This document shows, piece by piece, positions 29,610 through 64,000 of a DNA stretch of 64,000 nt (within the stretch, counting starts at the first letter, position 1; each line of letters begins with the position of its first letter). The translations under genes and the position numbers were made by a program. This DNA comes from Mytilus californianus (Eukaryota), in assembly GCF_021869535.1 (NCBI RefSeq), contig NW_026262582.1, forward strand, positions 73,222,001 to 73,286,000, in the 5' to 3' direction. Below the pieces are notes generated by a model that had not been told where the DNA came from, did not search any database, and was given only the letters and a program-made list of their open reading frames with translations.

Positions 29610-30448
29610 GCAAAAGCAGATAACGTGGCGCATACATCGCGAACATTGAAACACCCAAATGAAGCAATATATAAATGAAGTACGAACTCTGAAAAATTAA
29701 TACAGGTAATCTATATAATGCATATTGTGTTAAATATTTTAACGTTTTTTTTTTTCTTCGGTAAATTAATATATGCATGTTATTGTGATCTATACTCTGA
29801 CTTTGAGATGAAGAACATCAATAAAAGCGCTGTTCCTTTGCTTTTTTGTGTGTTTTTGCTGTGCATGTACTAACTTTGTGTTAGGGATGGATACCATATA
29901 TACTTTGTTTTTCTATCAGTCATAGTTACATGAAGATAATGTCATAAAGGCGCAAGTCACTTATGATATTTATATTAACGAATTAACTCAAATCCGTTGT
30001 TTCATGTTTACGGCGTTAGTTAAAGTAGGTAACATGTACCTAAATGCTTCTTTGCAAGTTAATTTGTATTGACTACACATGAAATATCCTAGCAATTATT
30101 GATTCGAAGCCTAAACGATTTCAGAGTTAAAAGCGGTTTATGTTCAGACAAACATTAAGCAATCCGTTAAAAATGCTTATTAAATATTTTCTGTTCGCAA
30201 TTATATTTTATTTTTATTTCAAAGATGTGCATTATAAGTCGGAGCATGTGACATCAATAGGTTCAAGACCTGTGGTGATTGGACATGGCCAAAAAAAAGA
30301 TGGAGACGTACTTTGCATTTGATAATGAAGGACCAAATGGAACATTGAAGGCGTCACACTATTGTATGTTGTTGCTAGATGATATACATTCAATTCTGTT
30401 AGGTGCACAAACAGAGGATCGCTTGGGAGCTATTTTTGCGAGAAATAA
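29610..30448 (+). pseudogene. C-type lectin pseudogene, exons 3 (29610-29705) and 4 (30225-30448) only
   Basis: Exon 3 ends ATG AAG TAC GAA CTC TGA AAA ATT AAT ACA G|GT, acceptor AG changed to AT. Exon 4 is frameshifted (gtgcattat...ctttgcatttgataatgaaggaccaaatggaaca...gcgagaaataaa); 3' flank matches copy C. Confidence 0.88.
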
Positions 30449-31555
30449 ATCATGACTGCCACTTTTACAAATTTTTACTTTTTATTTTAATGAACTGATT
30501 ATAGTTCAGTCCTTGAAAGTTCTTTTCGGGAGACGTAAGGTTGACCTTGAGTCAAGCTTTGTTCTATACAGTCATTTAACCAGGATCCTGATATACAAAG
30601 GGGTACCAGTTGAGTGTATTGTTTGTGAATAATGATGGATGCCGATTGTATTTTATCTCATAAAATGTGATAAATTGATGCTTGTCGCTGTTTTAAGTGG
30701 AATAATTGTTTGCATTGTCCATTTGTTTGGTTTCTGTTCAGGCGATGCCACCGTTTCGTGTTTAATTAAGGCTAGTCGCGGCGAGTCTGTTGCTAATCCA
30801 TATGAGTATTCTTGTCTATTTTTGAATATATATTTTCATTTTTACTTTTATCTTAAAGGAAAGTTAAGTTCAGGATGTAGTCGTTTCAGATTTAAGAACT
30901 TTTGTCAAATGTTCGGACTCCTTGAGTTTTTTTCCTGCGATACAGGGTAAAATATTTTGCCCAATGTCACCCACTTTGTATTCAAAGAAGACGTCAATAG
31001 CACATACAATATCATTACCAAAATCTAAGCAGATTCTAGATTTCTTTTCTTACTATTTGAGACCAAAATAATGCAAATGCTAAATGTAAGGTTGAAGTTT
31101 ATACAGAGATCATTTATCATATTTGTTGCCCAATAATTTAACAGATTAAATTGTCTAAAGCTTTCCCTCTATGTTTGACTATATTATCATGATTATAAAT
31201 TTCGTCGAACATCTTTCCCCTTTATAGCAATTTGTAAATTTGCATAACCCAAGGTGTTACAATTCTCTTCCTTATTTGTTGTCTTTGTACAATGCAGTTT
31301 TTGGTATTTTTGTCTTGTTTGTTGGTTCGTCTGTGTGCATAACGTGATGTTGTAATTTTATTTTGATTTATGATATTATTTTTCTGTTGTATCATCGAAC
31401 AATTGTTTCTCAAAAGCCTTAAGAATGAAGTTGTTACAGTCTAAGATGCCATGTATTGATAATCTGAGAATGCCTGCGTGATGTCTTATTTGTGCAATAT
31501 TTGAAAGTAGGTGTACAAGTCTACCTCAATTGACGCTCTTATCTTTCTCTGTTAA

Positions 31556-44793: not shown

Positions 44794-46287
44794 ACTTTTG
44801 CTATTCACATTTTGTTTATACTATGGGAACTTGTATTTGTTCATTGTCATGCCAGTATAGTATAATTTTGTATTTCTTTTTTTTTAAAAAACCTATTGTG
44901 CACAATATTAATCTTCAATGATTGTTTATTGATTAGTTATATTATGGTTTTAAATAATTTTGTGAAAAAAAATCTCTATTTATTCAATTTAAGTATGAAC
45001 GAGAAATTCTTCTATACTTTTTTTATCTCACATCAGTATCAACCCGAGGCATTAATAGAATAAAGGGAAATATGCTCGAGTGATTAAACTTAGTAGTAAG
45101 TAAAAAACTAATTTTTTATGTTGTAAAATCAATGGTAATCTTTCTGTATAAGGTATCCGTACTGAATGATATCAGTCAAGCTTGCATGGTATCAAACCCC
45201 ATAAGAAATAACATTTGCTGTGGGTGTACAAACTCATTATAGTTGAAATTGTGTACGCGTTTCGTCTACAAGAGACTCATCAGTGACGCTTGAATAAAAA
45301 CAATCTAAAGGGCGAAAATAAAGTACCAATTTGAAGAGAATTTAGGAGCCAAAATTCCGAGAGGTTTTGCCAAATAAAGCTTAGGAAATCTATTTCTGGC
45401 ATAGACAATCCTTAGAATTTTGAGAAAATTCAAAGTTTTGTAAACAGTTAATTTATAATTATGACCGCATCAATGATAATTCATGTCAACTCTGAAGTGA
45501 TGACTACAACAATTTCAAGCATCGAATTAACCCTCAACCAATATAATCCCTCGTACAGAACCGTCTGAATTATATTTGTGAATCTGGTTAATAAGGATGT
45601 GATACATGAATCGTAAAAGCCATATGATATATTCTATTTATTATGTACGTTTTTTTTTTTTCTGTTTCGGTTTGATAAAGCTTATGCAATCTTCACTGAT
45701 TTGTATATCGATATGAATCAGCACGTTATGCTTAAAATGTCGACGCACATTGCCTCAATCAACTTGTTCTCTGTCTTTAAGGGCTCTGTATTTTTGTTAT
45801 TACTTTTTTTTTCATAAATTAAGGCGACAGCAGTTTACCAATGTGCAAATCTCGTAGAGCGATTGTAAATAGACAAATCAAGGTAACAAACAAACCCCGA
45901 GGGAATCACATAAAACTTAAAGAGGAACGAGACCGGGTGCGTCGACAGGGTAAGCGTCTCCTAGACATATAACATAAACATCTTCATCTTCTGTGCGTAA
46001 CTTTATATTTTCAGACGGATGCAGTTATCCATTCGGTCGAGTTCGTTCAGGATGCTATCTTCTACAAAAAGATAACATTATTGCCGGTAAAGCTTTTGTA
46101 CGTTATCTTATCCTTCTTTCCGCAGTACTCAACTAGTTAACGATAATAGCCTTTGTTGCGAAATGCTGTTGACATAAGGATTTGGACTTTCAGTCAAAAT
46201 ACGTACGACGTGGTGCATATTTGGCGAACTTTGAAACTCTAAATCAAGCAATGTTGATGAAGTATGAACTCTGAAAAGTAAACATAG
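44794..46287 (+). pseudogene. C-type lectin pseudogene, exons 1-3 (44794-44854, 46015-46097, 46194-46287); exon 4 not found
   Basis: Exon 1 has ACT in place of ATG, then ..LFILWELVFVHCHA|GT. Exon 2 is intact (xGCSYPFGRVRSGCYLLQKDNIIAGKAF). Exon 3 reads SKYVRRGAYLANFETLNQAMLMKYEL-TGA, with donor GT changed to CT and Cys to Tyr. Confidence 0.88.
45255..45288 (-). ncRNA. Hammerhead motif (family 1), 3' stem I deleted
   Basis: rc: cgtca CTGATGA GTC tcttgta GAC GAAA cgcgta cac; core intact but the tctggcg arm is missing; inside a reverse-oriented repeat monomer at 45255-45500. Confidence 0.6.
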
Positions 46288-48537
46288 CTAATGTTAAGGT
46301 GAGGAAAAGGAGTAGAACACTAACAAATTAAGGTTGTGGATTGCAAGTCAGTGAAAAGGGTGATTTAATATCTCTCAAGGCTGACATTCAAACTACATGT
46401 ATCTGCTGAGCCTATTTCGAAAATGTGTTGGAAAACAGCTAACACACATAAGAAAAATCCTGCACAAAGCAGCTACCAACAGGATGACCGCTCATTCTAA
46501 CTACGAAATAAAAACTGGCCCGTGATTTGGAAAGCCGGCTTATATGTTTTAAATACTTAATGAGGCTAGCTAAGGTAAACAAATAACTCATGTTTAATAG
46601 ATTGTGAATTTAAATGTCTGTTGTCAAAATGATGTACCCCTACACTTATAGCGAGACGTGTTAATTGGTTAATTATTTCATAAAAAGGTATCAGTTATTT
46701 AGGATTGTTTTCCAGATGAGGAAATGATTCACAAAGTTTGTATTTAGATATTTATACAATGTCTAGTTGCTGTTAGTTTTCTGCACGTGAACGCTAAACT
46801 GCATACCTAGAGACCAAAACACTTCTAAATTGACAACAAACACAATGCATTAATACTCCGGGTGCGGGAATTTCTCGCTGCATTGAAGACCTGTTGGTGA
46901 CCTTCTGCTGTTGTCTGTTCTATGGTCGGGTTGTTGTCTCTTTGACACATTCCCCATTTCCATTTTTAACTTTATACTACTTTATTCACTATTATAACTT
47001 ATACATCAGAAGGATCACATGAATCTAAAATTGTAAAAAGAAAGGTAAGCCCATAAAAGGGACCTGAACAGAACAGATAAATAGATTATAACAGCAGTTT
47101 ATCGATGTTCAATTTTCGAAAATCCATTTTGAATTACATACTAGTATATAGTAATAAATTTTGATATCATTGGTTATTCGACAACTTTTCACCAGAGTTC
47201 AAGTAACGAAGATAAAAGCAAGTATAGGTCACCATATGGCCTTCACCAAAGAGGAAAATCCGCATCGTATAGTTAGCTATAAAAGTCCCCGACATGTTAA
47301 ATGTGACACAATTTAAACAAGAAAACTAACTGCCTAATTTAAACAATACAATTTACGAAAAACAAATATGACAGACATGAACCAACGACCAATGACAATC
47401 AGCAGTACCATCATATCGTAGGTCAACTACAACGCGTTTTTCATCACGTTACAATGAATTTGCAACAGGTTCCATATGTTCAAATGCATCACAAAACATG
47501 AAAATGAAAAACAATTAAATGGACTCAGACTTAAGTTCGGTTTGTCAAAAGTAGATAATTGATAACTATGTTACTGATTTATACCATTTGAATATGTCTC
47601 ACATGTTTTTTAGCTGTCTTAGATCTTTAGATACCAGAATAATCGTTTGTTCGGAAGGTTTACCGATTGTGTACTTTTCCTGATTGTGACACTTTGACTG
47701 ACTGCAGAAACTACTGTTGCCTTTTTTTTTCAAACAAATATGATCAAATTGAGCATTGAAGGACCTTCACAATAGATAATGAAATAGTCTAATTAATACT
47801 TTGCCTTGGACAATACACTTGCATGTACATCAAGACTGTTGCTTCGAAAGTGTAAAAATATTGATTCTGACGTATAATATACCAAATATGATATGTGTAT
47901 TGAGAGGGATACATATAACGAACGAGAAAAATCAAAACGAATTTGGACCTGCAAATATATGTCAAAACGAACAACATCATCTACCAAAATGCTAAAGAAT
48001 ATTAAAGGCCTGATAAATTTCTTGCATAGGCAGACAGGTACATATAGATAGAATTATCTTACTACAATACTCTAAATGAGTGAGAGAATAAGACAAAATA
48101 ATTTGTTTCAATGTCGGTAAAGGGCTATTTTTATATGCATTTATAAAAACGAAATGATTAATTGTATTGTTATTTAACGGGCCAGTCATTTTTCTTCAGT
48201 ATATTTCTTTTTATCAGTTCATGCTAGTAATCTCGTTACAAGAAAAGAAATCTAACCAAAATATTAGTTCATTCTTTCTTTCTGGTTTCTGCAAAATTTG
48301 TGTGCCATTTTATGAGTTTGAGATTCTATCAATAATCAATAATATAATAAGGTCAGTATATTACTTTTCGTTAGGTACCATTATTATTCAAATGATACAC
48401 TGTAAATGAATTTGCAAGGCATATGAATATTCTATTCTGGTATGTGATTCAATATTTGCATTGTTGCAAAAAGGTCAAAGTACATGATATTAATTTTACG
48501 AAATATGTTTCCATCATTAAAATGACATTTAATCAGG

Positions 48538-48601: not shown

Positions 48602-51188
48602 ATGTATTGTTTGTTTATATTATGTGGACTAGGTTTGATTTTTTGTCATGCTGGTATGGTAACATATTTTTTCTGTTTGTTCCTTTTTTACAAACAAATA
48701 TCGATTTACCACTCTATTTATCCTGAAATATTGACAGTTTGATTCGTTTTAAACTTCTCTGATAATCTGTGAAGAAAAGCCCTTGGTCGTTAATAGTATG
48801 TTCACCACTTCATTTTATTTGGTAATGGGTAAATGCTGCTCAATTACAACTATTATTCTTTTAAAAAACATATAATGCATTATGCTTGAAATTATGAAAA
48901 AATCATTATAGGTCATTTTCTTGGGTTTTTTTTCAAATTAAATTGAAATGAACAATTGATATTTTTGAACACATATTTTTGGATTTTTCTAATAATACGC
49001 TTGGGAAAAACGAAGTATTGGACAGCTTTAAAGATATAATAGAAATAACTGAAATTGCCAAGTATTTCACAGATGGGTCATACTGTTGTAGGAATAGAAA
49101 AAACCCAAAGAGGATTAAAAAATTTAACACAAGACAAACAATGTATCTGGATATACTGATCATTTCAAGGCACAATGTCTCACTTCATATCAATGTAATA
49201 GAGCTTCGTATGCCGTCCATATCTTCTTTTCCTTCATCACCAAGAATTCTGCTTTTGGAATTTTTTTTAAATTAAGATCTCTATTTTATATTTACAGATG
49301 CATGTAGTTACCCATACCGACGAGTTGGTAAAGGATGTTATCTTATACAAAAAGATAATATATCAGGCGATGATGCTTTTGTAAGTAATTTCTAAATTTC
49401 TTAAAGAAAAACAAAGTTTTACAAAGCATTCGACCGATAGAAATACATGGATATATAGACAAAGGGGGCGCACGTAAACCATATTTAGCCACACTTCATT
49501 TTTTGCCTGAACCAAGTAAAAAATCTGGCTATTGCGATTATTTAATGTTCGTTGTTGATTTCTTTGTTTGTATGTATGTTTTCCGATACGGAAGTCGGTT
49601 TTTGGGTCCTCAATGCTCAGCAACTTAGTACTTTATTTGGCCTTTTTAACTTTTTTCGTTACTGATGTGTATTTTGTAGACGAAACGCGCGTCTGGCTTA
49701 CAAACTTTTAATCCTGGTATCTATTATGAGTTTATTTGTTGGTTGATGTGGTATGCTGTACTGTGGATTAATTTTACGATTCTTGTTTTCCCTGTGTATG
49801 TGTTAAGTCTAAAAACAGAAGATGTGATATAATTGTCAATGATATAAGAATCCGCCAAACACCAAATAACCAGGGTGTTAACAACTACATATCACTGTAC
49901 TGCTTTGAAAAATTTTGAAATCTTATAACGTGTAAAAAGCTTCAAAATAAGATTTAAAGTCTCCTAGTAATTCATAATATATATTAATTTTATTTCATTT
50001 CCCTGACTTGTGACTCTAATATTTTAAGTACTCTTAGCTACACAATCTTTTTGTCGTCATCCTTGTTAAATTTATTTGTATGTCTGTTTCAATTTTTTAG
50101 TCATCCCAATTATTGACACATTAACATATCATATAAAAATAAAAAAGAAGTGGTATGATTGCCAATGAGACAACTATCCACAAAACTTCAATTGAAGTGG
50201 ATGAAAGCAATTATAGGGAACCGTACGACCTTCAACAATGAGAAAATCCTATACCGTATAGTCGGCAATAAAAGGCCCCGATATGAACAGTATGAAACAA
50301 TTAAATTGAGAAAAACTAACGGCCTAATTTATAACAAAACAACTATAGAAAAACAAATATGACAGAGATCACGTGTGGACTCACTTGTCTTATAAATACA
50401 CGACTTTAAACTCTTTTATACGTTATTTTGCTTAAAATCTTTCATGTTTTCAGGCAAAATGCTTACGACGTGGTGCATATCTGGCGAACTTTGAAACCCT
50501 AAATGAAGCAATGTTGATGAAGTATGAACTCTTAAAAATGAACACAGGTAATTTATACAATGCAAATGTTGTAACTATCATCCTCATAATAAAACAACAA
50601 ACAAGTATATTTATAATTAAATATATGCTAGTTATGATTACATGTAGATCATGTCACAATGTCACAATGTCGTCTGTAATTTAAGATTTTATTTATTAAC
50701 GAATTTAACTTAATCCCCTTGTTTCATGTATACTACATTTATTTATAGTAAGTTACATGTGCTTTAATGCTTTACTGCAATAAAATTTTAATTGGCTACA
50801 GATGAAATGTCCTAGCACTAGCAGATTCGACGGTTCAAGGATTTCTGGGTATGAAGGGGTTGTATGTTCAGACATAAGCGATCCGTTAAATATGCCTATT
50901 ACATAGTACACACTTGCAATTGTCTTTTATTTTTATTTCAAAGGTGTGCATTATTATGTCGGTGCACGTAACATCAATAGATATAAGACCGGTGGTGATT
51001 GGAGATGGATCAAGAAGGACGGCGAGATGGTCAAAATGACTTACTTTGCATTTGATGGTGGAGAACCAAATGGATCATTCAGTTCACCGGAAGATTGCAT
51101 GCTTTTCCTTGGTTCTAGACGATACAGGTTCCACAATGTTTGGTGCGCAAACGGTGGTTTACTTGGAGGTTATATTTGCGAAAAATAA
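48602..51188 (+). CDS. Secreted single-domain C-type lectin (perlucin-like), copy B, EPN motif; exons 48602-48653, 49298-49380, 50454-50547, 50944-51188 (157 aa)
   Basis: MYCLFILCGLGLIFCHA|DACSYPYRRVGKGCYLIQKDNISGDDAF|AKCLRRGAYLANFETLNEAMLMKYELLKMNT|GVHYYVGARNINRYKTGGDWRWIKKDGEMVKMTYFAFDGGEPNGSFSSPEDCMLFLGSRRYRFHNVWCANGGLLGGYICEK*; canonical GT-AG sites, exon sizes 83/94/245 as in copy A. Confidence 0.92.
49657..49697 (+). ncRNA. Degenerate hammerhead motif (family 1) in intron 2 of lectin B
   Basis: cgtta CTGATGT GTA ttttgta GAC GAAA cgcgc GTC tggc; A9 changed to T and a stem II mismatch. Confidence 0.6.
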
Positions 51189-54100
51189 ATTAATTATAAA
51201 ATATTGTGATTTTTTTTTATTTTTGTTGTCCATTTGTTATCTGATTTGAAATCTCTAAAATATATATAAGAACAAAAAAAAATCGAGCCCGGACATAAAA
51301 CCAGAGCTATGCATTAGGGAGATTTTCTCCTTCATTTTACTGAATTCAAAGTTGTTATTCGAACAATATCCGTATTTTTATGCCAGTATCGAAGTACTGA
51401 ATACGTGGCTGGTGATACCCTCAGTGATTTAAAGTACACACGCAGGGGTATCTATTACCAAGGCGATTATTCCAACTTTCCAATTGTCAACTTCTCATTT
51501 CTCAATAGAACGATACACTCTGCTCCGTCGGATGGCGTTTAAATACTAAATTTATACATTATGATCATGCATGTTCACATATTCAGACTTCATGAACAGG
51601 GTGTGATCCTACAGAGGAATTAGGAAGAACGACTGAAATCGACACGTTGACCGATACGATGTGTCCGTTTCTCAGCTCACTAGTGACATGTCTTCGCGGT
51701 CCTAAATTTTAACATACAGGATACGCTCAACCTGTCGACACAACCAGTCTCGCTCTTTTTGGAGCTCATGCGATTCTCTGAGTTTGTGTGTGTACCCTTG
51801 ATTTCTCTCTTTTTGTTCGATATACGAGATTTCAACGTCAGTAAAAATAATCGACTTGATTTTTATGTCTTATCTAAGACAGATGTTTTGTTCTTTAAAA
51901 ATTGTAGAGATTCGAACATTGGTAAACTACTTTCTCTTTAGTTTACCGAACGAGAAAAATCACAGGAAATATGTCGTGCGTGATAAAATTGGTATCTCAC
52001 ATTCATATCAATGATTTCGGTATGGTCTACTGTGGTCTTATCTGTCACTTTCTCCTTAGATTACAAATTGTACCAAATCAGTTTGAATTCATTTTCCTGT
52101 AACTGATATTTTGTAATACACCTGTATTTTATTTGTATATGCATCTATTCGTCTGTAAGCTTTGTAATCGAAACTGCACTCGACCTATAAACTGAAGAAG
52201 GGAACTGATGATATTCAAATTGATTAAACTTGACATTTATTAAATCTAAATTGTAACAATGGTAATTTTGTATTTGAATTAAAGAAAACAATGTATTCTG
52301 CTTCGAACATTGATATTTTAGGCATTGATAAATATATCTGAATTCATTCTGTTTTAAAAGCGTTAAATCATTGTATATTAGAAATGCATAAATAATCGTC
52401 ATGCAAGAATGTGCCTTACGTTAACGAAAACTAATGCATTTGAGATAATAATCGCATTAAACATTGACATACAAAGTAAACTATGTCAAAGAATACAAAA
52501 ATAAGAAGATGTGGTATGATTGCAAATGAGACAAATCTCCACCAGATACCAAATTACGTAGAAGTTAACAAACATAGGTCAAAGTATGACCATATCATGT
52601 TGTATCGATTTCTGGTGTTCTTCGGCATTACTCAGTTGTGACAATTTTTATGTCGGAAGTACACCCTGTTAATTGAATCCGTATAGTGTAAACATGCACG
52701 AGATATGTTAAACCCATACGATGGGTCAGGGGCTATATGTTACTACGGAGAAATGGGAAGATGACGATTGGAATGTTGAAATCATTACATTTGTCGTAGA
52801 ATTTAGTTTGAAGTCGTCCATCCGTGTCATTGTCGAGGGACGCAGTGGTGTTAAGGTTGTTCGCCACTTGAAAATGAACAAATATGGAGTGTTTTCATAT
52901 TCAGTGTCCGGTAAACAAAAAGTTGTCTCCAATCATAGTATAGTCGGTGTGTATAAATACATTAGATGTAGTTCTTTGAAAAAAAAATCAAAATCTAGTT
53001 TTAGACCCAGGGAAAAAGTCACGTGACCACCCGAAATAGAAAGTAAAATACTGGAAAACAAATCGTAATAGAACATTGACATGCTGATGTGTAAATATAT
53101 CGTTGAAGACACCTATGAATAGCCTATGGTCTAAAGTTCATTCAAAAATCATGGCAAAGTGTTGTTCTTAAAGATAATGCATAGAAAAACATATTCAAAG
53201 GTCCCATTTCACATTTTGTGCTTTTTTCAGTTACTCTTTCTGGGAAGCCAAAAAAAAATCGACCTCAGAGGCCAGTATGCCCTTGTTCTAATCGTTTTTA
53301 TGACTGATTCGTCAGTATTTCAGTTAAATCGTCGATTTTAAAACGCTCAATTGACTTTCAATGTTCCAAATGAGTTACTTCCCTTTGGTAACTGAGAACG
53401 CTGATTTTTCCTTTTAATTAATAAAATGAGCTGCTGTTTTTCTGTCCGTATGATATATTTTTTTTTTCTAAACTCTTTCACCTTGAGTTTTATTTGTTTG
53501 GTTATCAGCACAATTGGATAAGCGTATCGCTATTTTCATATATGTGGTTGAAAAAAGGAGGAGGGGTCGGGAGGACAACACATTTCATCAACGAATTTTG
53601 AAATCTTCGTTTTCATATCTAGCATGTGAAGGCACTGATAGTTTATGAAATTTACTGTATGCAGTTAAAGTCAGATTCTTTCATTTATACGCCAGTAAAA
53701 AATAAGAAGATGTGGTCAGATTTCCAATGACAGTGAGACAACTATCCAGATAGGATATTCAAATATTGTGGATATAAGCAATAATAATTATAGGTCACTG
53801 TACAGTATTCATTAATGAAGTTTATTTTTTAAAAGTTAAATTTGAGTCTAGACATGGTTGAGGGGGGTCCTGCATTTCTGTCAATCTGTATTCTTTAATG
53901 TTTAGGTAATCTTTTCTGTTCTTTATTTTTTTTTTGCCTAATCACTATTACAGACACTTATCTTTAAAATTTAGCACCATATTATTCTCTTTTTTATTTT
54001 TTGGGCCTTCTTTTCACTATTCTTTTATTTTTTTTTTCTTCATTTTTCTGCAGTATTGGCCATTATACTCTAGTATTCTGTAAATCCCTCTCAGACTCTG

Positions 54101-55870
54101 ATATATGTATCATACATGCTTTCCCTCAGAGTCAGAATTGTTGAATTTGTTCTGTTGTACTTGGTTCATTGTTTATTGTAATAATTTCATGTTGCCCCTA
54201 GATCATCATAGATGACCCATTGATTTTGAATGAACTATATTTATATGATCTATACTTTAGTTACACTAATGAGCAAATACATGTTTCAATGTTTTAAAAA
54301 ATATCAACACAATCTTAACTGTCCAATTGGTCAATTTATCACTCAAAAGAATACAAGGTGAGAAGATTTGACTTGATTTGCATGACTAAATGGGGAAAAA
54401 GATTAACAAGCAGGAGATCAGTAGCCAAGGCTTGTACAGGTTTTGGACTTGGCCCCTAAATATTTTTAAGTTAATTGAAAATATCCTTAATGCTTATGTT
54501 AATCTTTCATATTTTCACAAGTTGGGCCCTATATTGATACCCTGTTGAATATAATATTCAGTTGGAGAGGTTTTTGCATAGTTATATTTGTAATTGTATA
54601 TACCATGCTGATATGAAGACCCTTTTGATATATAGGTCTAAGTTCAAAATCTGCATTATAAGGTAAGAACTGGTTCTTCTCAGAATTGGTATATTTGACA
54701 AAGAATTAGAAATAATGTCTAATATGAGAACATTTATTGCTAAAAGCAAAGAAAAATTACATTAAAAGTTTCACTTAAATACATTTGTAGTTTTAATAAT
54801 ATCATAGAAAAAAAGGCACCTGTCAAACTGTTGATAAACATTTCCACTAGAACATAGTATAATATCCTAGAAGGAATAAATTATATTTCCTACCTCATTG
54901 ATAACGAATGATTACCTACACTTTTATTTAATCACTTTATCCTTGAAGTACATGAATCACATCGAATTTCCCTTTTCCATTCACATTGCTTTATACTCAT
55001 AGCAATTTTGAAGTAAAATTAACACATTTGTGGTGAACATTTAGAAAATTAATCCTCCCTTTTTAGGGTTTTCTCCAGTAGGCTTGATAACCTCTATGCT
55101 TTACTTTCAGTTTAAATATATAGGTCACTTTCTCACAGTTTGGATATATATATTCATTTGATCTGGAAAATATTAATAATGAAAATTAACAACTTGTTGG
55201 TCATAATGCTTGTAACTGTAAACAACCACCATAATCTAACACAAAACTTCACACATACATATAGATGTATTAAATAAATTGAAATATTTCAACTTCATTT
55301 ATCCTCATTAATTAAATTAAAATAAATATACTATCATCATTATAACTTTTCCAAAGATTGTGATCACCATTATCATAAATGATGGTTCTAAACACACTAT
55401 CAGTAAATCATCCTGATAACAAGACTTGTGAAATCAGGACCGAAGAAAATACACGAAACTGTTTGTAAACTTTAATGATGTACAGCTTTAAATTATTAAA
55501 AATTTTGATTGTTTTGAAGTTTAAACAAAAATTAACTGATCATATTTAAAAAGTGTTATTCTCATCATATATATTTATAATGACAGCAATAAGCATGAGC
55601 TTGAAGTTATATTCATAATTAAAGAGATGCATTTTGTTCAATTTCAATGTCTATAAATTCAAAATCTTGTACCAAATTTAAATTATAATCATTTATGCAA
55701 ACAGTTTATTAAATGGAATTAGAGATTTTAAATTTAGTTTGAAATGACCAAAAAACTGGGGTTTAGGCTAAACTACTGATTAAATTTATAAAAAACCAAG
55801 TACATTTTGTACTATCATTGTTTAATCATTGACAATCATACCACATCTTCTTTTTTATACTGAAATTTAC

Positions 55871-55941
55871 CTGTCTTGTTAATCCAATTGTCAATTGATG
55901 GCAAATTAATATCCTATTACAGCATACAGTCTGGTCACATC
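55871..55941 (-). other. Candidate 71-nt spliced exon of an unidentified minus-strand transcript
   Basis: ctgttttcttacag|GATGTG...AAGACAG|GTAAAT: good acceptor and donor in otherwise unique AT-rich DNA; one open frame (xCDQTVCCNRILICHQLTIGLTRQ). Confidence 0.3.
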
Positions 55942-57018
55942 CTGTAAGAAAACAGAGAACACATAAATAATTGAAAGACTTTCTATGCAAAAATTAAATG
56001 GAACAATTTACTCAAACAATCTTGAACAAGCAAATAAAAGATTTATACATTTTTAATTAAAATGCTATCTTTATTTTATACAGTATAAACCTTTGTTATC
56101 TATATTTTCTTATTCCTGCTATATGATAAAGAATAAAAAAAATCCTTTTTCCTAAAACCATAAATAGTTACCCTGCTAGCTAGCTACATTTATATAATGT
56201 GCACACACTTACAAATATAAAGCTTGATACTGGATTTATATAGAGAAATAAATGACACATTCAGGAAAAGTGCAATAATGTATCATCAACATTTTTTCTG
56301 AATGAAAGTTACATTTATTTTAACAAAGATTTTCAAACCATGAAGTTTTTCATACAATATATTTCAACTTTCAATTATATTCAGAGTTATATTTTTACAT
56401 CAAGAAATTGTTCATTCATAACTTTTCATTTGATAAGAGCTCAAAACTTTTATTTCTATATAACATGTATAAGTTTCCATGAAATAAAGTATCAATGAAA
56501 TAAATACAAATTCATGTTTGTCTTATATACTTGTCTGATAAGACAAATCAGTAAATTTATGCTTTGTGTACATATTTAATTGATTTTTCTGAAATCAAAT
56601 GGCAATTTATTGTACGTATTTAGAATTAAAGAACTCTACAAATAGTGTTATATGTACGAATCCAGATTTATTTTCGTCTAAAAAAACGAACACTTAGTGA
56701 ACACGCGTTCACATTATAAAATAAACAGGATCAAGTTGGAATTGGATAACCTCCCCTTTTTTATCGAAAAAAAACATACCACCTAACAGTACGCGATTTT
56801 AACACATCGCATGAAGACAAACATAAGTTTTAAGTGATATTGTACTTACATTTGAATACTCATGATTGTGTATGAGTCTTGTTTTCCGTCAGGAACATCA
56901 TTGAATCTTGTAAAATCCTCGTCAACAGCTGATTCGCAATTGTTTGTTTTGATGCCTTTTCAAGCTTTAAAATGACGTTGAGTGTAAGAATAAATGTGAC
57001 GATAACCAATGGAAACGA

Positions 57019-57204
57019 CTACAATGACTTCACAATGAGATTACGATAGAATCGTTGAAAATTCATGGAGAACTGCCTTAATATTACTGCGAAAAGATTA
57101 AGATACGAAACAGACCTTCTAAGTTTGGAAGCATCCTTAATCTCAATTTCACTTGGATATATAAGATTCAAGCTCTCACTACAATTTGAGATATTGAGTG
57201 ACAT
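57019..57204 (-). mobile_element. Old Penelope-like RT fragment
   Basis: LIYPSEIEIKDASKLRRSVSYLNL matches IYPIELKIKDTT..KSASYLDL at about 15980-16050; further relics at about 26340-26600, 51470-51640, 52590-52710 and 57740-57880. Confidence 0.65.
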
Positions 57205-59447
57205 GACATCTAATTAAAACTTCGGAAGATGTTTTATTTCTTTCTGTCTTTGAAAATGTGTTATAATTCTGCTTCATATGCATACACGGCAAATAAGGGG
57301 GCACAATAAGTACCTATTGCAGTATCGATATTTTGTTGAAATATCAATCCACCAAATTAAATACATATGTTGTCAATTAAAACGTTCAGCACTTTGATGA
57401 TATCATCTTCGGTCTATTTTTAATTGAAATCAGTACATTTCTTCACAAAGTAAGATTTGTCATGACCTAAAACAAGAAATTTGTATAAATGCGCTGTTTA
57501 GTGAGAAGATGAATTCGATCTTTCAATTAAACCTGGAAAATAGTACTGTTAAGTGTAGAAACAAAAATGAAAAGTTTTTATATAACTTCAAACTTGTCAA
57601 GGTTGTAATTAAAGATTTAGCTTTTTTTTTTAATTTCCAGTATCATCATCTGATTGACCAAGTTCAACACTGTCAAAATCAGTTGTAGGGTAGAAATGTC
57701 AAAAATTGTTATGAGATAGTACTGCTACTGTCAGAAACTGTTCGAAATATGACACAATTAAAACTTGTGTACTGTGAATTGCTGTAGTTCTTCCTCATAA
57801 GACTGTTAAAGCAGTTTTTGTGTCAGAAGGACATCTCTATCAATTAAGTCCGTGTAGATGAGAACATGCACGAGCGAACAGTAATAGGCGAGGTAAAATA
57901 TTCGTCATGTTAGTGTTATAATTATGTACCTCATTTCTTTCAAAATGTACAGAAATTGAACATGATGTTTAAAAGCGCAATATCATAAATATTTCAATGA
58001 CAGGTAGAAAGTAATGTATGAACCTGTGGACCTAATGAGCAACTCTTTGTTCACTTGGGTTTTTTTTAATAAATAAAACAAAGAATCACCATAAATAAAT
58101 AAAGTCTGATCTTTTCTGTAGAAAGAACACTAATAACACCAAAAACTGCTTTTTTAGAATTTTTTCGCTATATTTCTATGGGAGAGTGACCATGGATATT
58201 GGAATTTTGTTATATCCCAATTTCGGTCATGCTGGGAATTACTCATAGATTGTTATCAAATTATTCAAAATATTTTCGCATAGAATTAATACGATAATTT
58301 TGATAACAATATTATAGAGTAAAAATATCTAAAAAATAGTTCAGATACTATGCTATGAGAATATTTTTCTCCAAACTTCCGATGACCAATTACATTATAA
58401 TTCAACGGGAAAGTGTGGAGAACAGTATAGTTCGTTCAAAACACGTAAAATGTACAAATATCGTATCAAAGTTGTGTAGGGAGGTAGATCATTAAACCTA
58501 AATCTCATATATTAAGATATCTACGTTTTTATTAACAGTGGACATAAAACACTATTAGACTCACACGACGATCGAAAACGATGATAGTAGATATATAAAA
58601 ACTGAGGAATTATTAGCTACCCGTGCAATGAATCAGAGCTATGCCTGAAGGAGATACGTTTTATTTATTTTTTTAACATGATTTCCAAAATTAATAGCTG
58701 AGAAAATATTGACAATTTAAAAGTGGACACCATACTGTTTGTTATAGATTCTCGTTTGAAGTTGTCCATCTTTGTCAAAATGAAGATGTAAAGATCAGGC
58801 TTTGAAGAAGAGCTCCTAGTTTTTGTGGTATCCTTACTTTTAAAGTTCATTTAGATAAATGAGATGAATTCAGTATATTGTGAATAAATGTTAGAATGGA
58901 CACTACAGTTTATGGTTTTACCGAGGTCTTTAATGCTATCTATAATACTAGGAAATATTGAAATCTAAATGACTCTCTGATGTAGACGGGTAAACGTAAA
59001 TGCCTAAATACAATACGTGCAATGAGTACCAGAACAACGAACAAGCAAAAATTAGTCTGCCTGTCGCTTCGTGATTCTTTTAAGGGGTTATTCAAATAAA
59101 TTCTAAAAATTCCAATGACAAATTTAATTGCTCAATAAAACTTGTTTTTTATTTTCTTTTCGTAACTATCATTTCATCTTAGACATTTACAAATTAAATC
59201 GTGATAAAAAAATCTAACCAGAATAATAGTGCAGTGGGGTTTTTTGGTGGTTTCTCCGAGATTTTATATGTCTTCAGATGAATTAAAAATTCTATGAATT
59301 AATGATTCATTGAGAAGGTTAATATATTACTTTTCGTTATGTACAGTGGCATGTGTTTCAATATTGAAATTGTTGTAAAAAGTACGGAGTACATCGATAA
59401 CAAATGTACAAAATATGTTTCCATCATTAAAATGAAATTTGATCAGG

Positions 59448-59455
59448 TATATAAA
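59448..59455 (+). promoter_or_regulatory. TATA box of C-type lectin copy C
   Basis: TATATAAA 58 nt upstream of ccgccATG (59506). Confidence 0.68.
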
Positions 59456-59505
59456 TATAAAAGGACTAGCTGTCTATTTCGACATTAAGTTTGGAAAAAT
59501 CCGCC

Positions 59506-62500
59506 ATGTTTACCATATATTGTTTGTTTATATTATGTGGACTAGTTTTGGTTTATTGTCATGCTGGTATGTTAACATTTTTATCTGTTTATGCCTTTAT
59601 TTACAAATGAATTTTTCTTTACAACTCTTTTTATCTTGAAAAACTGACATTTTGATTCGTATTTCTCTTGTGATCAGTTGAGAATAGTAATTCACAAGAG
59701 GTTTCATAATTTTGTAGGCATAGCCAAGAAAAAAACCAAGAGCATTAAAAAAGAAACACAAGGCAGACAATGTAGCTGGACATTTCATGGCAATTTTTCT
59801 CACATGACTTCAATTCAATGGAGCTTAATATTCATATGATGAAGACATAATCTTTTAATCAGTTTAATTGAGGTCTGGAGCTGGCATGTCAGTAACTGCT
59901 AGTAGTCTGTTCTTATTTATGTATTATTGTCATTTTGTTTATTTTCTTTTGTTTCCTATTTTGACATCGGACTCGGACTTCTCTTTTACTGAGTTTTACT
60001 GTACGTACTGTTGTGCGTTTGTTTTTTCTACATTGGCTAGAGGTATAGGGGGAGGGTTGAGATCTCAAAAAAACATGTTTAACCCCGCCGCATTTTTGCG
60101 CCCGTCCCAAGTCAGAAGCCTCTGGCCTTTGTTAGTCTTGTATCTTTTTTTTAATTTTAGTTTCCTGTGTATAATTTGGAGTTTAGTATGACGTCCATTA
60201 TCACTGAACTAGTATACATATTTGTTTAGGGGCCAGCTGAAGGACGCGGGTGCGGGAGTTTCTCGCTGCATTGAAGACCCATTGGTGGCCTTCGGCTGTT
60301 GTCTGCTCTATGGTCGGGTTGTTGTCTCTTTGACACATTCCCCATTTCCATTCTCAATTTTACTTCCATATCTTCTATACCTTCATCACCTAGAATTTTG
60401 CTTTCGGGAAGTTTTTTAAAATTAAAATCTCTATTGTATTTTAACAGATGCATGCAGTTATCCGTACCGACGAGTTGGTAAAGGGTGTTATCTAATACAA
60501 AAAGATAATATATCAGGCGATGCTGCTTTTGTAAGTAATTTCTAGATTTCTTATATTAAATAAAAAAAACAAAGTTTTACAAAACATTGGACCAATAGAA
60601 ATGTGTCGTATTAATTAGAACTAATCATCAAATACATCTACTCGTCGTACCATTGACATTAATGTTTAAATTGACTTATAGGCCTAAACGGTCGGGTATT
60701 CTCATAATTGTTTTCATTTTCACTGTATTATAAAATATTTGTCAAAAATACTTGTCACTATAATAAATAATTTAGTTAGTTAGTTTGTTACATGGATAGA
60801 CAAAGGGGCGTACGTAAATCAGATGAAGCCACACAACAGTTCTTGACTTTACCAAGTCAAAAATCTTGCTATTTTGACTCTTCAATGTTCGTTGTTGTTT
60901 CCTTGTTTGCAGTATGCTGTTTTATAGGGAAGTCGGGTTTCTTTAATATCGTACTTTATTTGGCCCTTTAATTTTTTTCGTCACTGATGAGTCTTTTGTC
61001 GACGAAACGCGCGTCTAGCTTACAAAAGCTTAATTCTGGTATCTATGATGATTTTATTATATGGTTGATGGGGTATGTTGTACTAGGGAATATATGTGAG
61101 ATTCTTGTTTTCGCTATTTATGAGTCATTTAAAAGAAAAGAAGATGTCATTCTATTGTCAATTGTATGATGTTTACAACTACATATATGTATCACTGTAA
61201 TGCCTTCAACTATTTTAAAACCTTATAATGTGTAGTAAGCTTCAAAATTAGATAAGTAATTCATTATATATTAACTTCATTTCATTTCTCTGACTTGTAA
61301 CTCTCATACTGTAAGCACTATTAGCTACACAAACTTTTTTGTCGGCGTCTTTGTTATGTTTGTTTTATTTTTTTAGTCAGTTGTGTTGTATGTCTGGGAT
61401 ATATGTTTACACTGCTTCGGCCAAATTATTGTTACAATAATCTCTAATACAAAACTAAGGAAATGTGGTATGATTCCCAATGAGACAACTTTCCACCAAA
61501 GTTCGAATGATGAGGATGTAAGCAATTATATAAGCAACAGTACGGCCTTCACCAATATGGAAACCCTTATTGTGTAGTCAGAAATTGAAGCCCCGACATG
61601 AAAACAATAAACCAATCCAATTAAGAAAACTAACGGCCATACTTATAACAAAACAATTTACGAAAAACAAATATGATAAACATGGACCTACGACAACCAC
61701 TGAACGACAGGTTCCGGACTTAGGACAGGCAGTTAAAGAATATGGCGGGGTTAAACCTGTTTGAAACCCTCCTCTAACCTTGGACAACCGTCCCCTTGTA
61801 TTATGTTTATTGCAAATTTTATCAATATAATATAAATATAAACAAATGTCATACAAGTGGGAGGTTAAGCTAGCTTTAAAACCAGGCTTAACCACCATTT
61901 TTTTTTTTAAAAATGTATGTTCCACGACAAGAATGTAACATTTGCTTTCCATACATGTACGTTCCATTCGTTAATAAAGTCTAACGTTTGATTTCGTCAG
62001 CTTTTCTTGACTTCCCCATAGCTTGTTTTTTTTTAATACTTTTTTCTCAACCATTGTGTTGAAAACTTTGGTGACCCTATAAGATAACGAATTCTCCATC
62101 ATCCATGTGTTATCTGTATTTTAATTTTCATTAAATGTTTATTCATTTCTTTATTCAAAGATATTGATGCTAGCATTAGAAAAAATAACAAAAAACAAGG
62201 AGTTTGCCAAGAGGTAATTCCCTATTGTCTTATAAGGTAATATTTATTTACCTCTTTCTCTGCATTTTTCTCCAATCATGTGAGGACTAATAATCAAACG
62301 ATTTTATATTGACATGTTTTTATATGATAACATTCTTTTAGAAGTTATTTTGCTCAAAATCTTTCATGTTTTCAGGCAAAATGCTTACGACGAGGTGCAT
62401 ACCTGGCGAACTTTGAAACCCTAAATGAAGCAATGTTGATGAAGTACGAACTCTTAAAAATGAACACAGGTAATGTATACAATGCAAATGTTGTTTCTAT

Positions 62501-63545
62501 CATATTATTGAATAAAGTAACAAACAAGTGCATTAATATATGTTAGTTATAGTTACATTTAGATCATGTCGTCTGTAATTTATGATTTTTGTATTAACAA
62601 AATAACTTAAGGAAGTTCGCTACTCAGTTTCAAAATAACAAGCTTTTCATAACACTAGTATATATTGATAGGGCATTAATAAAGGAACCAAAAGAGCGGA
62701 AAAAAAGTATAGGTCCGTGTGCTTGTTTTCGAGATATTAGCCATTGAAATTTTGGCGGGAAAATGTTCTCTCTTGATTTTTCATAGCTTTATCATTGACA
62801 AGTTTAAGTTGTCAAAAACTTTTAAAAAATAACAAAGATTTTATAAGACTTTTACAGATGGCTTATAATTATACATGTAAAAGATTTATAAAAAGAAAAA
62901 TGGGGGTTAGTGGGCAAATTTTTTTAAGGCATTCAAATGGATAAATCCAGAGGATTCCGAAAATCTGACAAAAAGTCAGAAACAAGAGTAGCAAACATCC
63001 TTAAGTTAATCCCCTTCTTTCATGTTTACTACTTTTATTTTTAGCAAGTTTCAAGTGTTTTAGTGCTTTATAGCATTAAAATTTTAATTGGCTACAGATG
63101 AAATGTCCCAGAACTAAGAAATTCGACGATTCAACGATTTCTATGAAGGGGTTGCACGTTCAGACATAAGCGATCCGTTCAATATGCCTATTACATAGTT
63201 TATACTTGGAATTGTCTTAGACATAAACACTTATCTTAACATTTAAGTCAGAAAAATAAAGATTGCAGTTTAACACTAGTGTCTTACTTTCATTTCATAG
63301 GTGTGCACTACTATATTGGTGGACGTGACATTAATAGATATAAGCCCGGTGGTGATTGGAGATGGATCAAGAAAAACGGAGAAATGGTCAAGATGCCATA
63401 CTTTGCTTTTGATAATGGAGAACCAAATGGAACATTCAAGTCGGCACAAGATTGTATGTTCTTCTATGCTTCTAGAGGATATAAGTTCCATTCTGTTTGG
63501 TGTGCAAACGGAGGCTCGCTTGGAGGTTATATTTGCGAGAAATAA
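59506..63545 (+). CDS. Secreted single-domain C-type lectin (perlucin-like), copy C, EPN motif; exons 59506-59566, 60448-60530, 62376-62469, 63301-63545 (160 aa)
   Basis: MFTIYCLFILCGLVLVYCHA|DACSYPYRRVGKGCYLIQKDNISGDAAF|AKCLRRGAYLANFETLNEAMLMKYELLKMNT|GVHYYIGGRDINRYKPGGDWRWIKKNGEMVKMPYFAFDNGEPNGTFKSAQDCMFFYASRGYKFHSVWCANGGSLGGYICEK*; Kozak-like CCGCCATG, GT-AG introns. Confidence 0.93.
59827..60360 (+). mobile_element. Penelope-like terminal segment inserted in intron 1 of lectin C
   Basis: Reverse complement of 23470-24015; the paralogous intron of copy B (49195-49225) lacks it. Confidence 0.85.
60979..61020 (+). ncRNA. Hammerhead motif (family 1) in intron 2 of lectin C, sense strand; core intact, stem I weakened
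   Basis: cgtca CTGATGA GTC ttttgtc GAC GAAA cgcgcg TC tagct; stem I cgtca/tagct has two mismatches. Confidence 0.65.
61463..61790 (+). mobile_element. SINE-like dispersed repeat in intron 2 of lectin C
   Basis: gaaatgtggtatgatt.ccaatgagacaact..cagtacggccttc..gaaaactaacggcc..cgacaaccactgaa..ggcggggttaaac; a shorter copy lies at 50135-50370 in copy B. Confidence 0.75.
62611..63001. mobile_element. TTAA-flanked MITE (Kolobok-like) in intron 3 of lectin C
   Basis: TTAA|GGAAGTTCGCTACTC...GAGTAGCAAACATCC|TTAA (13/15); copy B intron 3 has the empty site aacttaatcccc at about 50708. Confidence 0.8.
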
Positions 63546-64000
63546 AGCATGACTACCACTTTGACAAATGTTACTTTTTAATTAGTGCATTGATTATACA
63601 TGTAGATTAGTTCTGGAAAGTTCTTTCCGGGAAAATTTACGTTGACCTATATTTTGGTTTAATCCGTTTTGGTATCTATCATATATCTTTCCACATTTCT
63701 GAGAACGAAACTATTGTTTTTGAATAAACTAATGACGTCGTCTGATGAACAGGTTTAGATAGATTGATAGATAACTCTCTAAAAATTGAGTACAAGTTCA
63801 CAGAGAAACATACGATATCAAAAACAACAATAAAATAAAGTTAAAGATAAAGGTAAACAAATGCAGTGGGTTAATGTTCTGTACGATCCCGGAATTGACA
63901 GTTAGTTTAACCGGTTGAATCCAAACATGCATTGAAAATAAACACAAAGTTCTCCAATCACATCTTTATTGGATGTCAATAGGTAAAAACTACGAAAGAC

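What the first reader, a model, noticed from the sequence alone, without database searches (positions are those of the whole stretch)
48602..63545. Mosaic lectin genes: exons 2-3 nearly identical between B and C, while exon 4 and the 3' flank come from different lineages
Seen (hand alignment): B and C differ at 1 residue across exons 2-3 but at about 18 of 81 in exon 4. Exon 4 and the downstream flank of B match the inverted pseudogene at 18650-18920 (KKDG, GSxSxxEDC, SRRY, FHNV; flank ..ctataaaatat...ttttgttgtccatt.gttatctg). Those of C match the pseudogene at 30225-30550 (catgact.ccacttt..caaat..ttactt). Copy A pairs with the 25285 relic. B and C share intron-2 insertions that the inverted pseudogene lacks. 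Inference: recombination or gene conversion in intron 3 swaps the ligand-binding exon onto a homogenised 5' half, so pseudogenes may act as a reservoir of binding-site diversity.
Basis: partly seen in the sequence, partly recalled or inferred. Interest (0 to 1): 0.72.

Follow-up and report, generated by a model that had tools for sequence, protein, structure and literature searches.

The report
Old chimeric lectin gene, mussel array
One gene in a California mussel array of small secreted C-type lectins is an old hybrid whose sugar-binding tail came from another paralogue lineage; this is an ordinary product of recombination in gene arrays, not a pseudogene-fed diversity system.

Summary
The window is Mytilus californianus chromosome DNA. 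It holds part of a tandem array of at least 16 four-exon C-type lectin genes and pseudogenes, and the array runs past both window ends.

- B and C differ at 1 residue in exons 2-3 and at 18 of 80 in exon 4.
- The 3' flanks pair as B/Inv, C/psi30 and A/R25.

The mosaic is real. Non-coding homology and trees put B with the C-like (T) lineage from intron 2 to mid exon 4. From there to about 78 nt past the stop, B sits with the minus-strand (S) lineage. Reciprocal AU tests reject each half's clade on the other half (p 0.009 and 0.0003).

Three corrections:
1. The switch lies inside exon 4, at the EPN codons (window 51068-51080), not in intron 3.
2. The 5' half is not homogenised. B-C dS is 0.25 and intron divergence 0.14, so protein identity reflects purifying selection (dN/dS 0.03).
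3. Nothing shows pseudogenes acting as donors. The junction is old and is shared with a decayed duplicate (D68) just outside the window. No recent conversion tracts were detected.

Expression is not shown. The scan's notes hold no similar earlier finding. This is a new member of a known kind, of modest interest.

The parts
48602..48653 (+). Gene B exon 1 (start codon and hydrophobic leader; intron phase 1)
   Evidence: Translation and GT donor; tblastn
49298..49380 (+). Gene B exon 2 (83 nt)
   Evidence: AG/GT borders; alignments
50454..50547 (+). Gene B exon 3 (94 nt)
50548..50943 (+). Gene B intron 3. It is T-lineage up to the acceptor site. It matches only C, D68, psi30, m12 and the end of E77, and shares a deletion with C and D68.
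   Evidence: blastn; alignments; tree with {B,C,D68} at 96/99
50944..51188 (+). Gene B exon 4 (245 nt with the stop). It encodes the EPN motif, the following Glu, and FHN at the WND position.
   Evidence: alignments to Mincle, CD23 and MBP
51068..51080 (+). Junction zone in B. The last T-type diagnostic sites are at exon-4 nt 119 and 125. S-type sites start at nt 132 and run on from nt 137, with one T-type site at nt 135 between them. The zone covers the EPN codons.
   Evidence: Diagnostic-site table; MaxChi breaks at exon-4 nt 125-146
51081..51266 (+). S-lineage tract of B: the second half of exon 4 plus about 78 nt of 3' flank. Further downstream B matches only D68.
59506..59566 (+). Gene C exon 1
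60448..60530 (+). Gene C exon 2
62376..62469 (+). Gene C exon 3
63301..63545 (+). Gene C exon 4. The second half is T-lineage. The first 60 nt are closest to the S-type copy m2 (92%).
63546..63648 (+). C's T-lineage 3' flank, shared with psi30 and E77 (m12 carries only the part of the T-type flank further downstream)
4644..5861 (+). Gene A, exons 2-4 (4644-4726, 5291-5384, 5617-5861). This is a third lineage, with EPD in place of EPN. Exon 1 was not located.
18678..19770 (-). Inverted pseudogene Inv. It is S-lineage throughout. It has internal stops and a deletion of about 150 nt that fuses intron 3 to exon-4 nt about 57. Its sister copy is m25, outside the window.
25285..25532 (+). Relic R25: exon 4 only, with stop codons. 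It is the sister of A.
29445..30547 (+). Pseudogene psi30: end of intron 2, exon 3, intron 3, exon 4 and flank. It is T-lineage in both halves.
9661..9882 (+). X9: a T-lineage exon-3 relic with its flanks
46002..46294 (+). D46: a pseudogene with exons 2 and 3 separated by only about 80 nt and a stop in exon 3. No exon 4 was found.

Best explanation
The window is part of a tandem array, about 125 kb long, of short secreted C-type lectin genes on a Mytilus californianus chromosome. The array evolves by duplication, decay and occasional exchange between paralogues.

Two lineages matter here:
- T copies, all on the plus strand: C, E77, psi30, m12, X9.
- S copies, all on the minus strand: m2, m32, m25, Inv.

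Gene B and its decayed duplicate D68 (just past the window end) carry T-lineage sequence from at least the 3' end of intron 2 to the middle of exon 4. From the EPN codons to about 78 nt beyond the stop codon they carry S-lineage sequence.

One old ectopic recombination event in the common ancestor of B and D68 explains this. The event came after that ancestor split from C (non-coding divergence about 0.14) and before the B/D68 duplication (about 0.08-0.12).

I infer that interlocus gene conversion of an S-type tract of about 0.2 kb into a T-type gene is somewhat more likely than a crossover. All S copies lie in the opposite orientation to the T copies, and the S-like stretch is short. This step is not shown.

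The tract replaced the part of the domain that holds the residues after EPN. This includes the position equivalent to the Asp of WND, which is Asn in B and Ser in C. B therefore probably differs from C in its calcium and sugar site.

The identical proteins in exons 2-3 reflect purifying selection, not homogenisation.
For: Organism and family:
- A homologue from M. californianus lies on a contig of 80,295,649 bp, which is the length of contig C2.
- The genome size of 1.65 Gb fits PMC9710001.
- Full-length homologues hit Pfam Lectin_C above the cut-off.
- Exon 4 aligns its EPN motif and its FHN motif to EPN and WND of Mincle, CD23 and MBP.

Lineages from non-coding homology:
- B's intron 3 matches only T copies.
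- B's 3' flank matches only S copies and D68 (alignments).

Trees:
- S clade at 95/97 in the exon-3 block, excluding B.
- {B,C,D68} at 96/99 in the block from the end of intron 2 to intron 3.
- T clade {C,m12,psi30,E77} at 95/96 in the 3' block, excluding B and D68.

AU tests:
- The 3' block rejects {B,D68,C}, p=0.00026.
- The exon-3 block rejects {C,E77,psi30,m12}, p=0.0093.
- The exon-3 block rejects {B,Inv}, p=4e-10.

Junction:
- Of the first 7 diagnostic sites that can be called, up to exon-4 nt 125, 6 are T-type. Of the 17 from nt 132 on, 15 are S-type.
- MaxChi on exon sites alone gives p 0.0024-0.04, with breaks at exon-4 nt 125-146.

Distances in exon-4 nt 129-245:
- B to S copies 0.13-0.18; B to T copies 0.21-0.32.
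- C shows the reverse.

Synonymous step: B-C dS is 0.25 in exons 2-3 and 0.67 in exon 4 (Fisher p=0.037), with dN/dS 0.18 in exon 4.

Not an artefact:
- D68 has the same junction at 5-16% divergence.
- Contigs from three other individuals cover 50523-50960, 50993-51186 and 51162-51500 with 1-3 mismatches.
Against: - Tests confined to exon 4 are weak. PHI gives p=0.08-0.10. The MaxChi p-values are not corrected for the number of triplets tried, and two triplets with m2 as parent were not significant.
- The broad AU tests did not reject: B and D68 placed beside the whole S clade in the exon-3 block (p=0.15), and beside the T copies in the 3' block (p=0.068).
- The groups were named after the alignments had been seen.
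- Only 7 diagnostic sites separate S from T in the first half of exon 4.
- No present copy is a close donor; the best is 0.13 away.
- Beyond +78 nt B's flank matches neither lineage, so conversion and crossover both need an extra event.
- No single read or contig spans intron 3 through to the flank in another individual.
- The RNA run that was read (6% of it) had no reads on B's exons, so function is not shown.
Confidence: 0.77

Rival explanations
1. Exon 4 is swapped repeatedly by recombination in intron 3 onto a 5' half that is kept uniform by conversion, and pseudogenes serve as a reservoir of binding-site variants.
For: Each of A, B and C has a pseudogene partner for exon 4 and its flank. 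There are hints of further patches. C's first 60 nt of exon 4 are 92% identical to m2 (nominal p=0.024). m2 groups differently in its 5' and 3' parts (the 3' block rejects {m2,m32} at p=0.012).
Against: - B's intron 3 is T-type up to the acceptor site, and the switch is inside exon 4.
- The 5' half is diverged (dS 0.25, introns 0.14).
- No pseudogene is closer to the tract than the copies with open exons.
- No tract survives Bonferroni correction over 36 pairs.
- The gene/pseudogene pairs are old duplicates at 15-25% divergence.
Confidence: 0.08
2. C, not the B/D68 ancestor, is the converted copy. The common ancestor of B, C and D68 already had the S-type tail, and C later regained a T-type tail.
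For: B, C and D68 are equidistant in the 5' region (0.135-0.142). The order of the splits is therefore unresolved, and either history needs one event.
Against: C's distance to psi30 and m12 is about the same in the 5' region (0.22-0.24) and in the tail (0.11-0.18 in exon-4 nt 129-245; 25% over exon 4 plus flank). This is what an unconverted T copy would show. A recent T donor would make the tail much closer.
Confidence: 0.1
3. There was no recombination. Exon 4 simply evolves fast under diversifying selection, and the flanks differ through insertions and deletions.
For: The second half of exon 4 carries most of the amino-acid differences. B against m2 there shows 15.5 non-synonymous and 1.5 synonymous differences.
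Against: - B-C dN/dS in exon 4 is 0.18, and synonymous divergence itself rises.
- B's flank is positively homologous to the S flanks, and it lacks the roughly 100-nt T-specific proximal flank.
- The AU tests reject a shared topology.
Confidence: 0.03
4. B is an assembly chimera that joins reads from two paralogues.
For: The array is repetitive, and the contigs from other individuals are short unitigs that do not bridge the whole gene.
Against: The same junction is present at a second locus (D68), which has diverged by 5-16% and has its own 1.6 kb of matching downstream DNA. In another individual, run X5 record 23 covers 50993-51186 across the junction with 1 mismatch.
Confidence: 0.02

Closest known systems
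Birth-and-death evolution of tandem immune-receptor arrays with hybrid genes made by unequal crossover or interlocus gene conversion. Examples from my own knowledge, not tested here: the C-type-lectin-like NK receptor clusters Ly49/KLR, KIR hybrids, and opsin and globin hybrid genes.
   Same: A tandem array with many pseudogenes, segmental duplication of multi-gene units, a chimeric paralogue with a localised junction, and the junction placed in the best-conserved stretch of the gene.
   Different: Here the genes are small secreted invertebrate lectins. The donor lineage lies in inverted orientation. The event is old, and no polymorphic hybrids were shown.
Expanded, lineage-specific C-type lectin repertoires of bivalves (Saco et al. 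2023, PMC10140915)
   Same: Mytilus-restricted proteins made of a single C-type lectin domain with a leader. The family is narrow: 47 representatives at E<=0.001 among 1.84 billion proteins, and the six clusters looked up carry only Mytilus names where they are named.
   Different: That paper's text has no occurrence of 'recombination', 'exon' or 'chimer'. The array structure and the mosaic gene are not described there.
Diversification by gene conversion templated on pseudogenes (chicken immunoglobulin loci; gene conversion proposed for Biomphalaria FREPs). From my own knowledge.
   Same: A functional gene flanked by many related pseudogenes that carry alternative versions of the binding region.
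   Different: The defining features were not met here. No pseudogene is a closer match than the copies with open exons. No recent or multiple tracts were detected. There is no evidence of somatic or recurrent exchange.

Membership tests
C-type lectin domain (Pfam PF00059 Lectin_C) | A significant match to the family profile | tested here: inconclusive
   Single exons of A, B and C give no Pfam hit. Full-length homologues found with B's exon 4 hit Lectin_C at 23.5-35.5 bits against a cut-off of 22.6. All 7 PDB hits to exon 4 are C-type lectin domains, at E 0.06-0.6.
C-type lectin domain (Pfam PF00059 Lectin_C) | Six cysteines of the long-form domain | tested here: met
   Read directly from the translations. 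There are two Cys in exon 2, one in exon 3 and three in exon 4 in A, B, C, m2 and m39. D68 has lost the exon-3 Cys, and E77 and F82 have lost the last Cys.
C-type lectin domain (Pfam PF00059 Lectin_C) | Canonical calcium site 2 and sugar site: EPN or QPD together with WND | tested here: not met
   EPN is present in B and C, and A has EPD. The WND position reads FHN in B and the S copies and FHS in C, A and the T copies. Calcium-dependent sugar binding is therefore uncertain.
Chimeric paralogue made by ectopic recombination | Adjacent segments support conflicting trees | tested here: met
   AU p=0.00026 and p=0.0093 in the reciprocal tests. The clades have support of 95-99.
Chimeric paralogue made by ectopic recombination | A localised breakpoint | tested here: met
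   Diagnostic sites switch between exon-4 nt 125 and 137. MaxChi gives p 0.0024-0.04. PHI on exon 4 alone gives only p=0.08-0.10.
Chimeric paralogue made by ectopic recombination | Not an assembly artefact | tested here: met
   A second, diverged locus has the same junction. Contigs from three other individuals match. No single-molecule bridge was available.
Interlocus gene conversion, as opposed to crossover | A tract bounded on both sides by acceptor-lineage sequence | tested here: inconclusive
   The 5' bound is clear. At the 3' end, S homology stops at about +78 nt, but T homology does not resume. The inverted orientation of all S copies favours conversion.
Diversification templated on pseudogenes | Pseudogene donors closer to the tract than any functional copy, and multiple recent tracts | tested here: not met
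   B's tract against Inv is 0.15 and against m25 0.18. Against m2, whose exons 2-4 read open, it is 0.15, and against m32 0.13. No pairwise tract survives correction.
Concerted evolution (homogenised 5' half) | Synonymous and intron divergence near zero in the homogenised part | tested here: not met
   B-C exons 2-3 show 8 synonymous differences in 37.7 sites, dS 0.25. Non-coding p is 0.142.

The most novel reading that the evidence does not exclude
The second half of the lectin domain, from the EPN codons to the C-terminus with its short flank, behaves as an exchangeable cassette among paralogues of this Mytilus-specific array. Under this reading the conserved EPN-coding stretch serves as the preferred junction. 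Repeated exchanges (the B/D68 tail, the m2-like patch at the start of C's exon 4, the mixed affinities of m2 and E77) would create combinations of binding sites that differ between mussel haplotypes.
Probability: 0.15. Interest if true: 0.55.

Novelty: new member of a known kind. Interest (0 to 1): 0.3.

Why it matters
Bivalves rely on large, lineage-specific lectin repertoires for recognising microbes. How new binding specificities arise in these repertoires is poorly documented at the level of gene structure.

This locus gives a clean, datable example. The calcium and sugar-site half of a lectin domain was moved between paralogue lineages, and the resulting gene kept an open reading frame.

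It is also a caution. Identical protein sequence in neighbouring exons was due to purifying selection, not homogenisation. A pseudogene that looks like a donor was only an old duplicate.

The example is a useful annotation and a starting point for population work. It does not change how such arrays are thought to evolve.

Tried and rejected
- Pfam on single exons gave no hits.
- A profile of eight exon-4 peptides against the PDB gave no hits at E<=0.01.
- The PHI test on exon 4 alone was not significant: p=0.10 for 11 copies, 0.08 for 8 copies, and 0.23 without B and D68.
- A GENECONV-like longest-run scan over 36 pairs gave a minimum p of 0.014, so nothing survives correction.
- Broad AU tests were not rejected: B and D68 beside the whole S clade in the exon-3 block (p=0.15) or the exon-2 block (p=0.38), and beside the T copies in the 3' block (p=0.068).
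- The exon-2 block alone is nearly unresolved.
- MaxChi with m2 as the S parent gave p=0.15 for B and 0.06 for D68. A test of C as a chimera of m2 and E77 gave p=0.74.
- A search for a donor of C's 65-nt intron-3 insertion in the whole genome found none.
- A copy on another chromosome (L005) and more distant copies are not donors of B's tract.
- RNA reads: none fell on B's exons in the 6% of run X21 that was read.
- In one search the exon-2 coordinates of m2 were off by one codon. The exon 2+3 dN/dS values for pairs with m2 in that call are therefore invalid, and I do not use them.
Exons 2 and 3 meet at a codon boundary, and they were pooled inside a script only to count differences. Nothing joined was saved or sent.
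Full report
**What the region is**

The window is G000:C2:73222001-73286000 of a 1.65-Gb, 175-contig genome with about 32% G+C. A homologue annotated in Mytilus californianus lies on a contig of 80,295,649 bp, which is exactly the length of C2. I therefore take the organism to be the California mussel.

The genes in the finding are four-exon genes of 157-160 codons:
- B: 48602-48653, 49298-49380, 50454-50547, 50944-51188.
- C: 59506-59566, 60448-60530, 62376-62469, 63301-63545.

All have GT/AG borders and intron phases 1, 0, 1. Exon 1 is a hydrophobic leader. Exons 2-4 together make one long-form C-type lectin domain with six cysteines.

Single exons give no Pfam hit. B's exon-4 peptide finds only 47 proteins at E<=0.001 among 1.84 billion representatives. 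The six clusters looked up carry only Mytilus names where they are named. The full-length ones hit Lectin_C above the cut-off.

Exon 4 aligns its EPN to the EPN of Mincle, CD23 and MBP. Its FHN aligns to their WND (E 0.06-0.26, all hits C-type lectin domains). So exon 4 does encode the calcium and sugar site, but the WND motif is not canonical.

I never assembled or searched the spliced model.

These hold:
- B and C differ at 1 of 58 residues in exons 2-3 and at 18 of 80 in exon 4.
- The three flank pairings are real: B with the inverted pseudogene, C with the copy at 30.2 kb, A with the relic at 25.3 kb.

Two qualifications apply. First, exons 2-3 carry 9 nucleotide differences in 177, of which 8 are synonymous. 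Second, the array does not stop at the window. tblastn and blastn on 80 kb of added flank show at least 16 copies between C2:73.18 and 73.305 Mb. I name the outside copies by their window coordinate:
- m39, m32, m25, m12 and m2 lie upstream.
- D68, E77 and F82 lie downstream.

Only A, B, C, m2 and m39 have exons 2-4 free of stops and frameshifts.

**Lineages**

Non-coding homology sorts the copies cleanly.

From the 5' end of intron 2 through the flanks of exon 3 to all of intron 3:
- B, C, D68, E77, psi30, m12 and X9 share one sequence (T), as far as each copy reaches. All are on the plus strand.
- m2, m32, m25 and Inv share another (S). All are on the minus strand.

In the second half of exon 4 and the 3' flank:
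- C, E77, psi30 and m12 are T. Their flank begins with a stretch of about 100 nt that the S copies lack; m12 has lost that first stretch and keeps the T-type flank beyond it.
- m2, m32, m25 and Inv are S, and so are B and D68.
- A and R25 form a third type.

B and D68 are therefore the only copies with a T front and an S tail.

**Trees and tests**

Tree support:
- The exon-3 block recovers the S clade without B (95/97).
- The block from the end of intron 2 to intron 3 gives {B,C,D68} at 96/99, with all three pairs at p=0.135-0.142 and 0.22-0.24 to psi30 and m12.
- The block of exon-4 nt 129-245 plus flank gives {C,m12,psi30,E77} at 95/96 and {B,D68} at 98/100 among the S copies.

These two splits cannot sit on one tree. 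The 3' block rejects {B,D68,C} (AU p=0.00026). The exon-3 block rejects {C,E77,psi30,m12} (p=0.0093). It also rejects {B,Inv} (p=4e-10).

The groups were defined after I had seen the alignments, which weakens these p-values somewhat. Broader constraints were not rejected (p 0.07-0.38).

**Where the switch lies**

I scored columns where the T and S sets each have a near-fixed but different base:
- At nt 27 of exon 4, a weak site, B and D68 are S-type.
- From nt 35 to nt 125 they are T-type.
- At nt 132 they are S-type, and at nt 135 T-type.
- From nt 137 to nt 239 they are S-type, with one exception.

This places the junction at window 51068-51080, on the EPN codons, the most conserved stretch of the exon. 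It is not in intron 3, which is T-type right up to the acceptor site.

MaxChi on exon sites only gives p=0.0024-0.04 for five triplets, with breaks at exon-4 nt 125-146. It was not significant when m2 was the S parent.

Raw distances agree. In nt 129-245, B is 0.13-0.18 from S copies and 0.21-0.32 from T copies. C shows the reverse.

PHI on exon 4 alone is only p=0.08-0.10. The case therefore rests mainly on the contrast between intron 3 and the flank.

**Selection or history**

B-C synonymous divergence is 0.25 in exons 2-3 and 0.67 in exon 4 (Fisher p=0.037). dN/dS is 0.03 in exons 2-3 and 0.18 in exon 4. So exon-4 divergence is not a matter of dN>dS. The identical proteins in exons 2-3 are due to purifying selection on sequences about as diverged as the introns (0.14). 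There is no homogenised 5' half.

**Age and mechanism**

D68 is a dead duplicate of B:
- It has a 16-nt deletion in exon 3.
- It has lost the exon-3 cysteine.
- No exon 1 was found.

It shares B's junction, exon 4 (94.7%), intron 3 (84%) and 1.6 kb of downstream DNA (88-89%). The DNA upstream of C matches the DNA upstream of E77 (86%). This suggests that a two-gene unit [B..C] was duplicated to give [D68..E77].

The chimera therefore predates that duplication and postdates the split from C.

B's S homology ends at about +78 nt, whereas S copies share more than 1 kb of flank among themselves. T homology does not resume after that point.

All S copies are inverted relative to the T copies. A simple unequal crossover is therefore unlikely, and a conversion tract of about 0.2 kb is my preferred mechanism, at roughly 55:45. 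This is inference.

**Pseudogene reservoir**

This idea is not supported:
- Inv is no closer to B's tract than m2 or m32.
- Inv is sister to m25, which lies outside the window (100/100 in the exon-2 block).
- psi30 groups with m12 and E77.

A longest-run scan found no pairwise tract that survives correction.

**Artefact check**

The second locus with the same junction argues against misassembly. In addition, contigs from three other individuals (runs X2, X4, X5, a different study from the likely source sample) match B at 50523-50960, 50993-51186 (across the junction, 1 mismatch) and 51162-51500.

No single contig bridges the whole gene. RNA run X21 (6% read) gave reads only on the intron-2 repeats, so expression of B is not shown.

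**Verdict**

The mosaic is real and statistically supported. It is a single old exchange with its junction inside exon 4, in an array that evolves by ordinary birth and death. There are hints of further old patches, in C's first 60 nt of exon 4 (92% to m2) and in m2's mixed affinities.

The bivalve C-type lectin survey I read does not describe such chimeras (PMC10140915). The scan's notes hold no similar finding.

It is a new member of a known kind. Interest is 0.3.

Noticed in passing
Outside the window: L030-L037 (C2:73172001-73222000 and 73286001-73316000): The lectin array extends past both window ends, with at least 16 copies over about 125 kb. Exons 2-4 read open only in A, B, C, m2 and m39. 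All S-lineage copies are on the minus strand and all T-lineage copies on the plus strand.
   Followed up: partly
window 51189-52838 and 58005-59200, against L035 4652-6472 and 6640-7802: DNA downstream of B matches DNA downstream of D68 (88-89%). DNA upstream of C matches DNA upstream of E77 (86%). This suggests that a two-gene unit was duplicated. The B-C spacer has about 5 kb extra (52838-58005).
   Followed up: partly
window 49544-49751 and 50064-50375 (intron 2 of B): Two very high-copy repeats, with summed contig depth of 10^4 to 10^5 in three individuals. They were the only parts of B that drew RNA reads.
   Followed up: no
window 63301-63360: The first 60 nt of C's exon 4 are closest to the S-type copy m2 (92%), compared with 86% to B and 83% to E77. 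This may be a second short old exchange. The nominal p is 0.024, which is not significant after correction.
   Followed up: partly
window 62611-63000 and 63219-63283: C's intron 3 carries an insertion of about 390 nt and an extra 65-nt segment just upstream of exon 4. B and D68 lack both. No source for the 65-nt segment was found in the genome.
   Followed up: partly
window 18929-18990 (minus strand): In the inverted pseudogene a deletion of about 150 nt fuses intron 3 to about nt 57 of exon 4. The intron part matches m25's intron 3.
   Followed up: yes
window 51072-51185 against L034 7371-7484 (m2): Between B and m2 the second half of exon 4 has 15.5 non-synonymous and 1.5 synonymous differences (ratio about 3, Fisher p=0.5). 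This is a hint of diversifying selection on the binding-site half, and it is not significant.
   Followed up: partly
L035 8109-8159 and 9355-9405; L036 3254-3493: E77 has two copies of exon 1, 1.25 kb apart. It has Tyr in place of the last conserved Cys, as does the pseudogene F82. Its intron 1 matches B's rather than C's, although its upstream DNA matches C's.
   Followed up: no
L034 (m2) and L031 (m32), against L032 (m25) and window 18678-19770: The 5' end of m2's intron 2 resembles that of m32, but its exon-4 tail and 1 kb of flank resemble m25 and Inv. The 3' block rejects {m2,m32} at p=0.012, while the exon-2 block is uninformative. m2 may be another mosaic.
   Followed up: partly
window 46002-46294: Pseudogene D46 has exons 2 and 3 only about 80 nt apart, whereas intron 2 is 0.4-1.8 kb in the other copies. 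No exon 4 was found for it.
   Followed up: no
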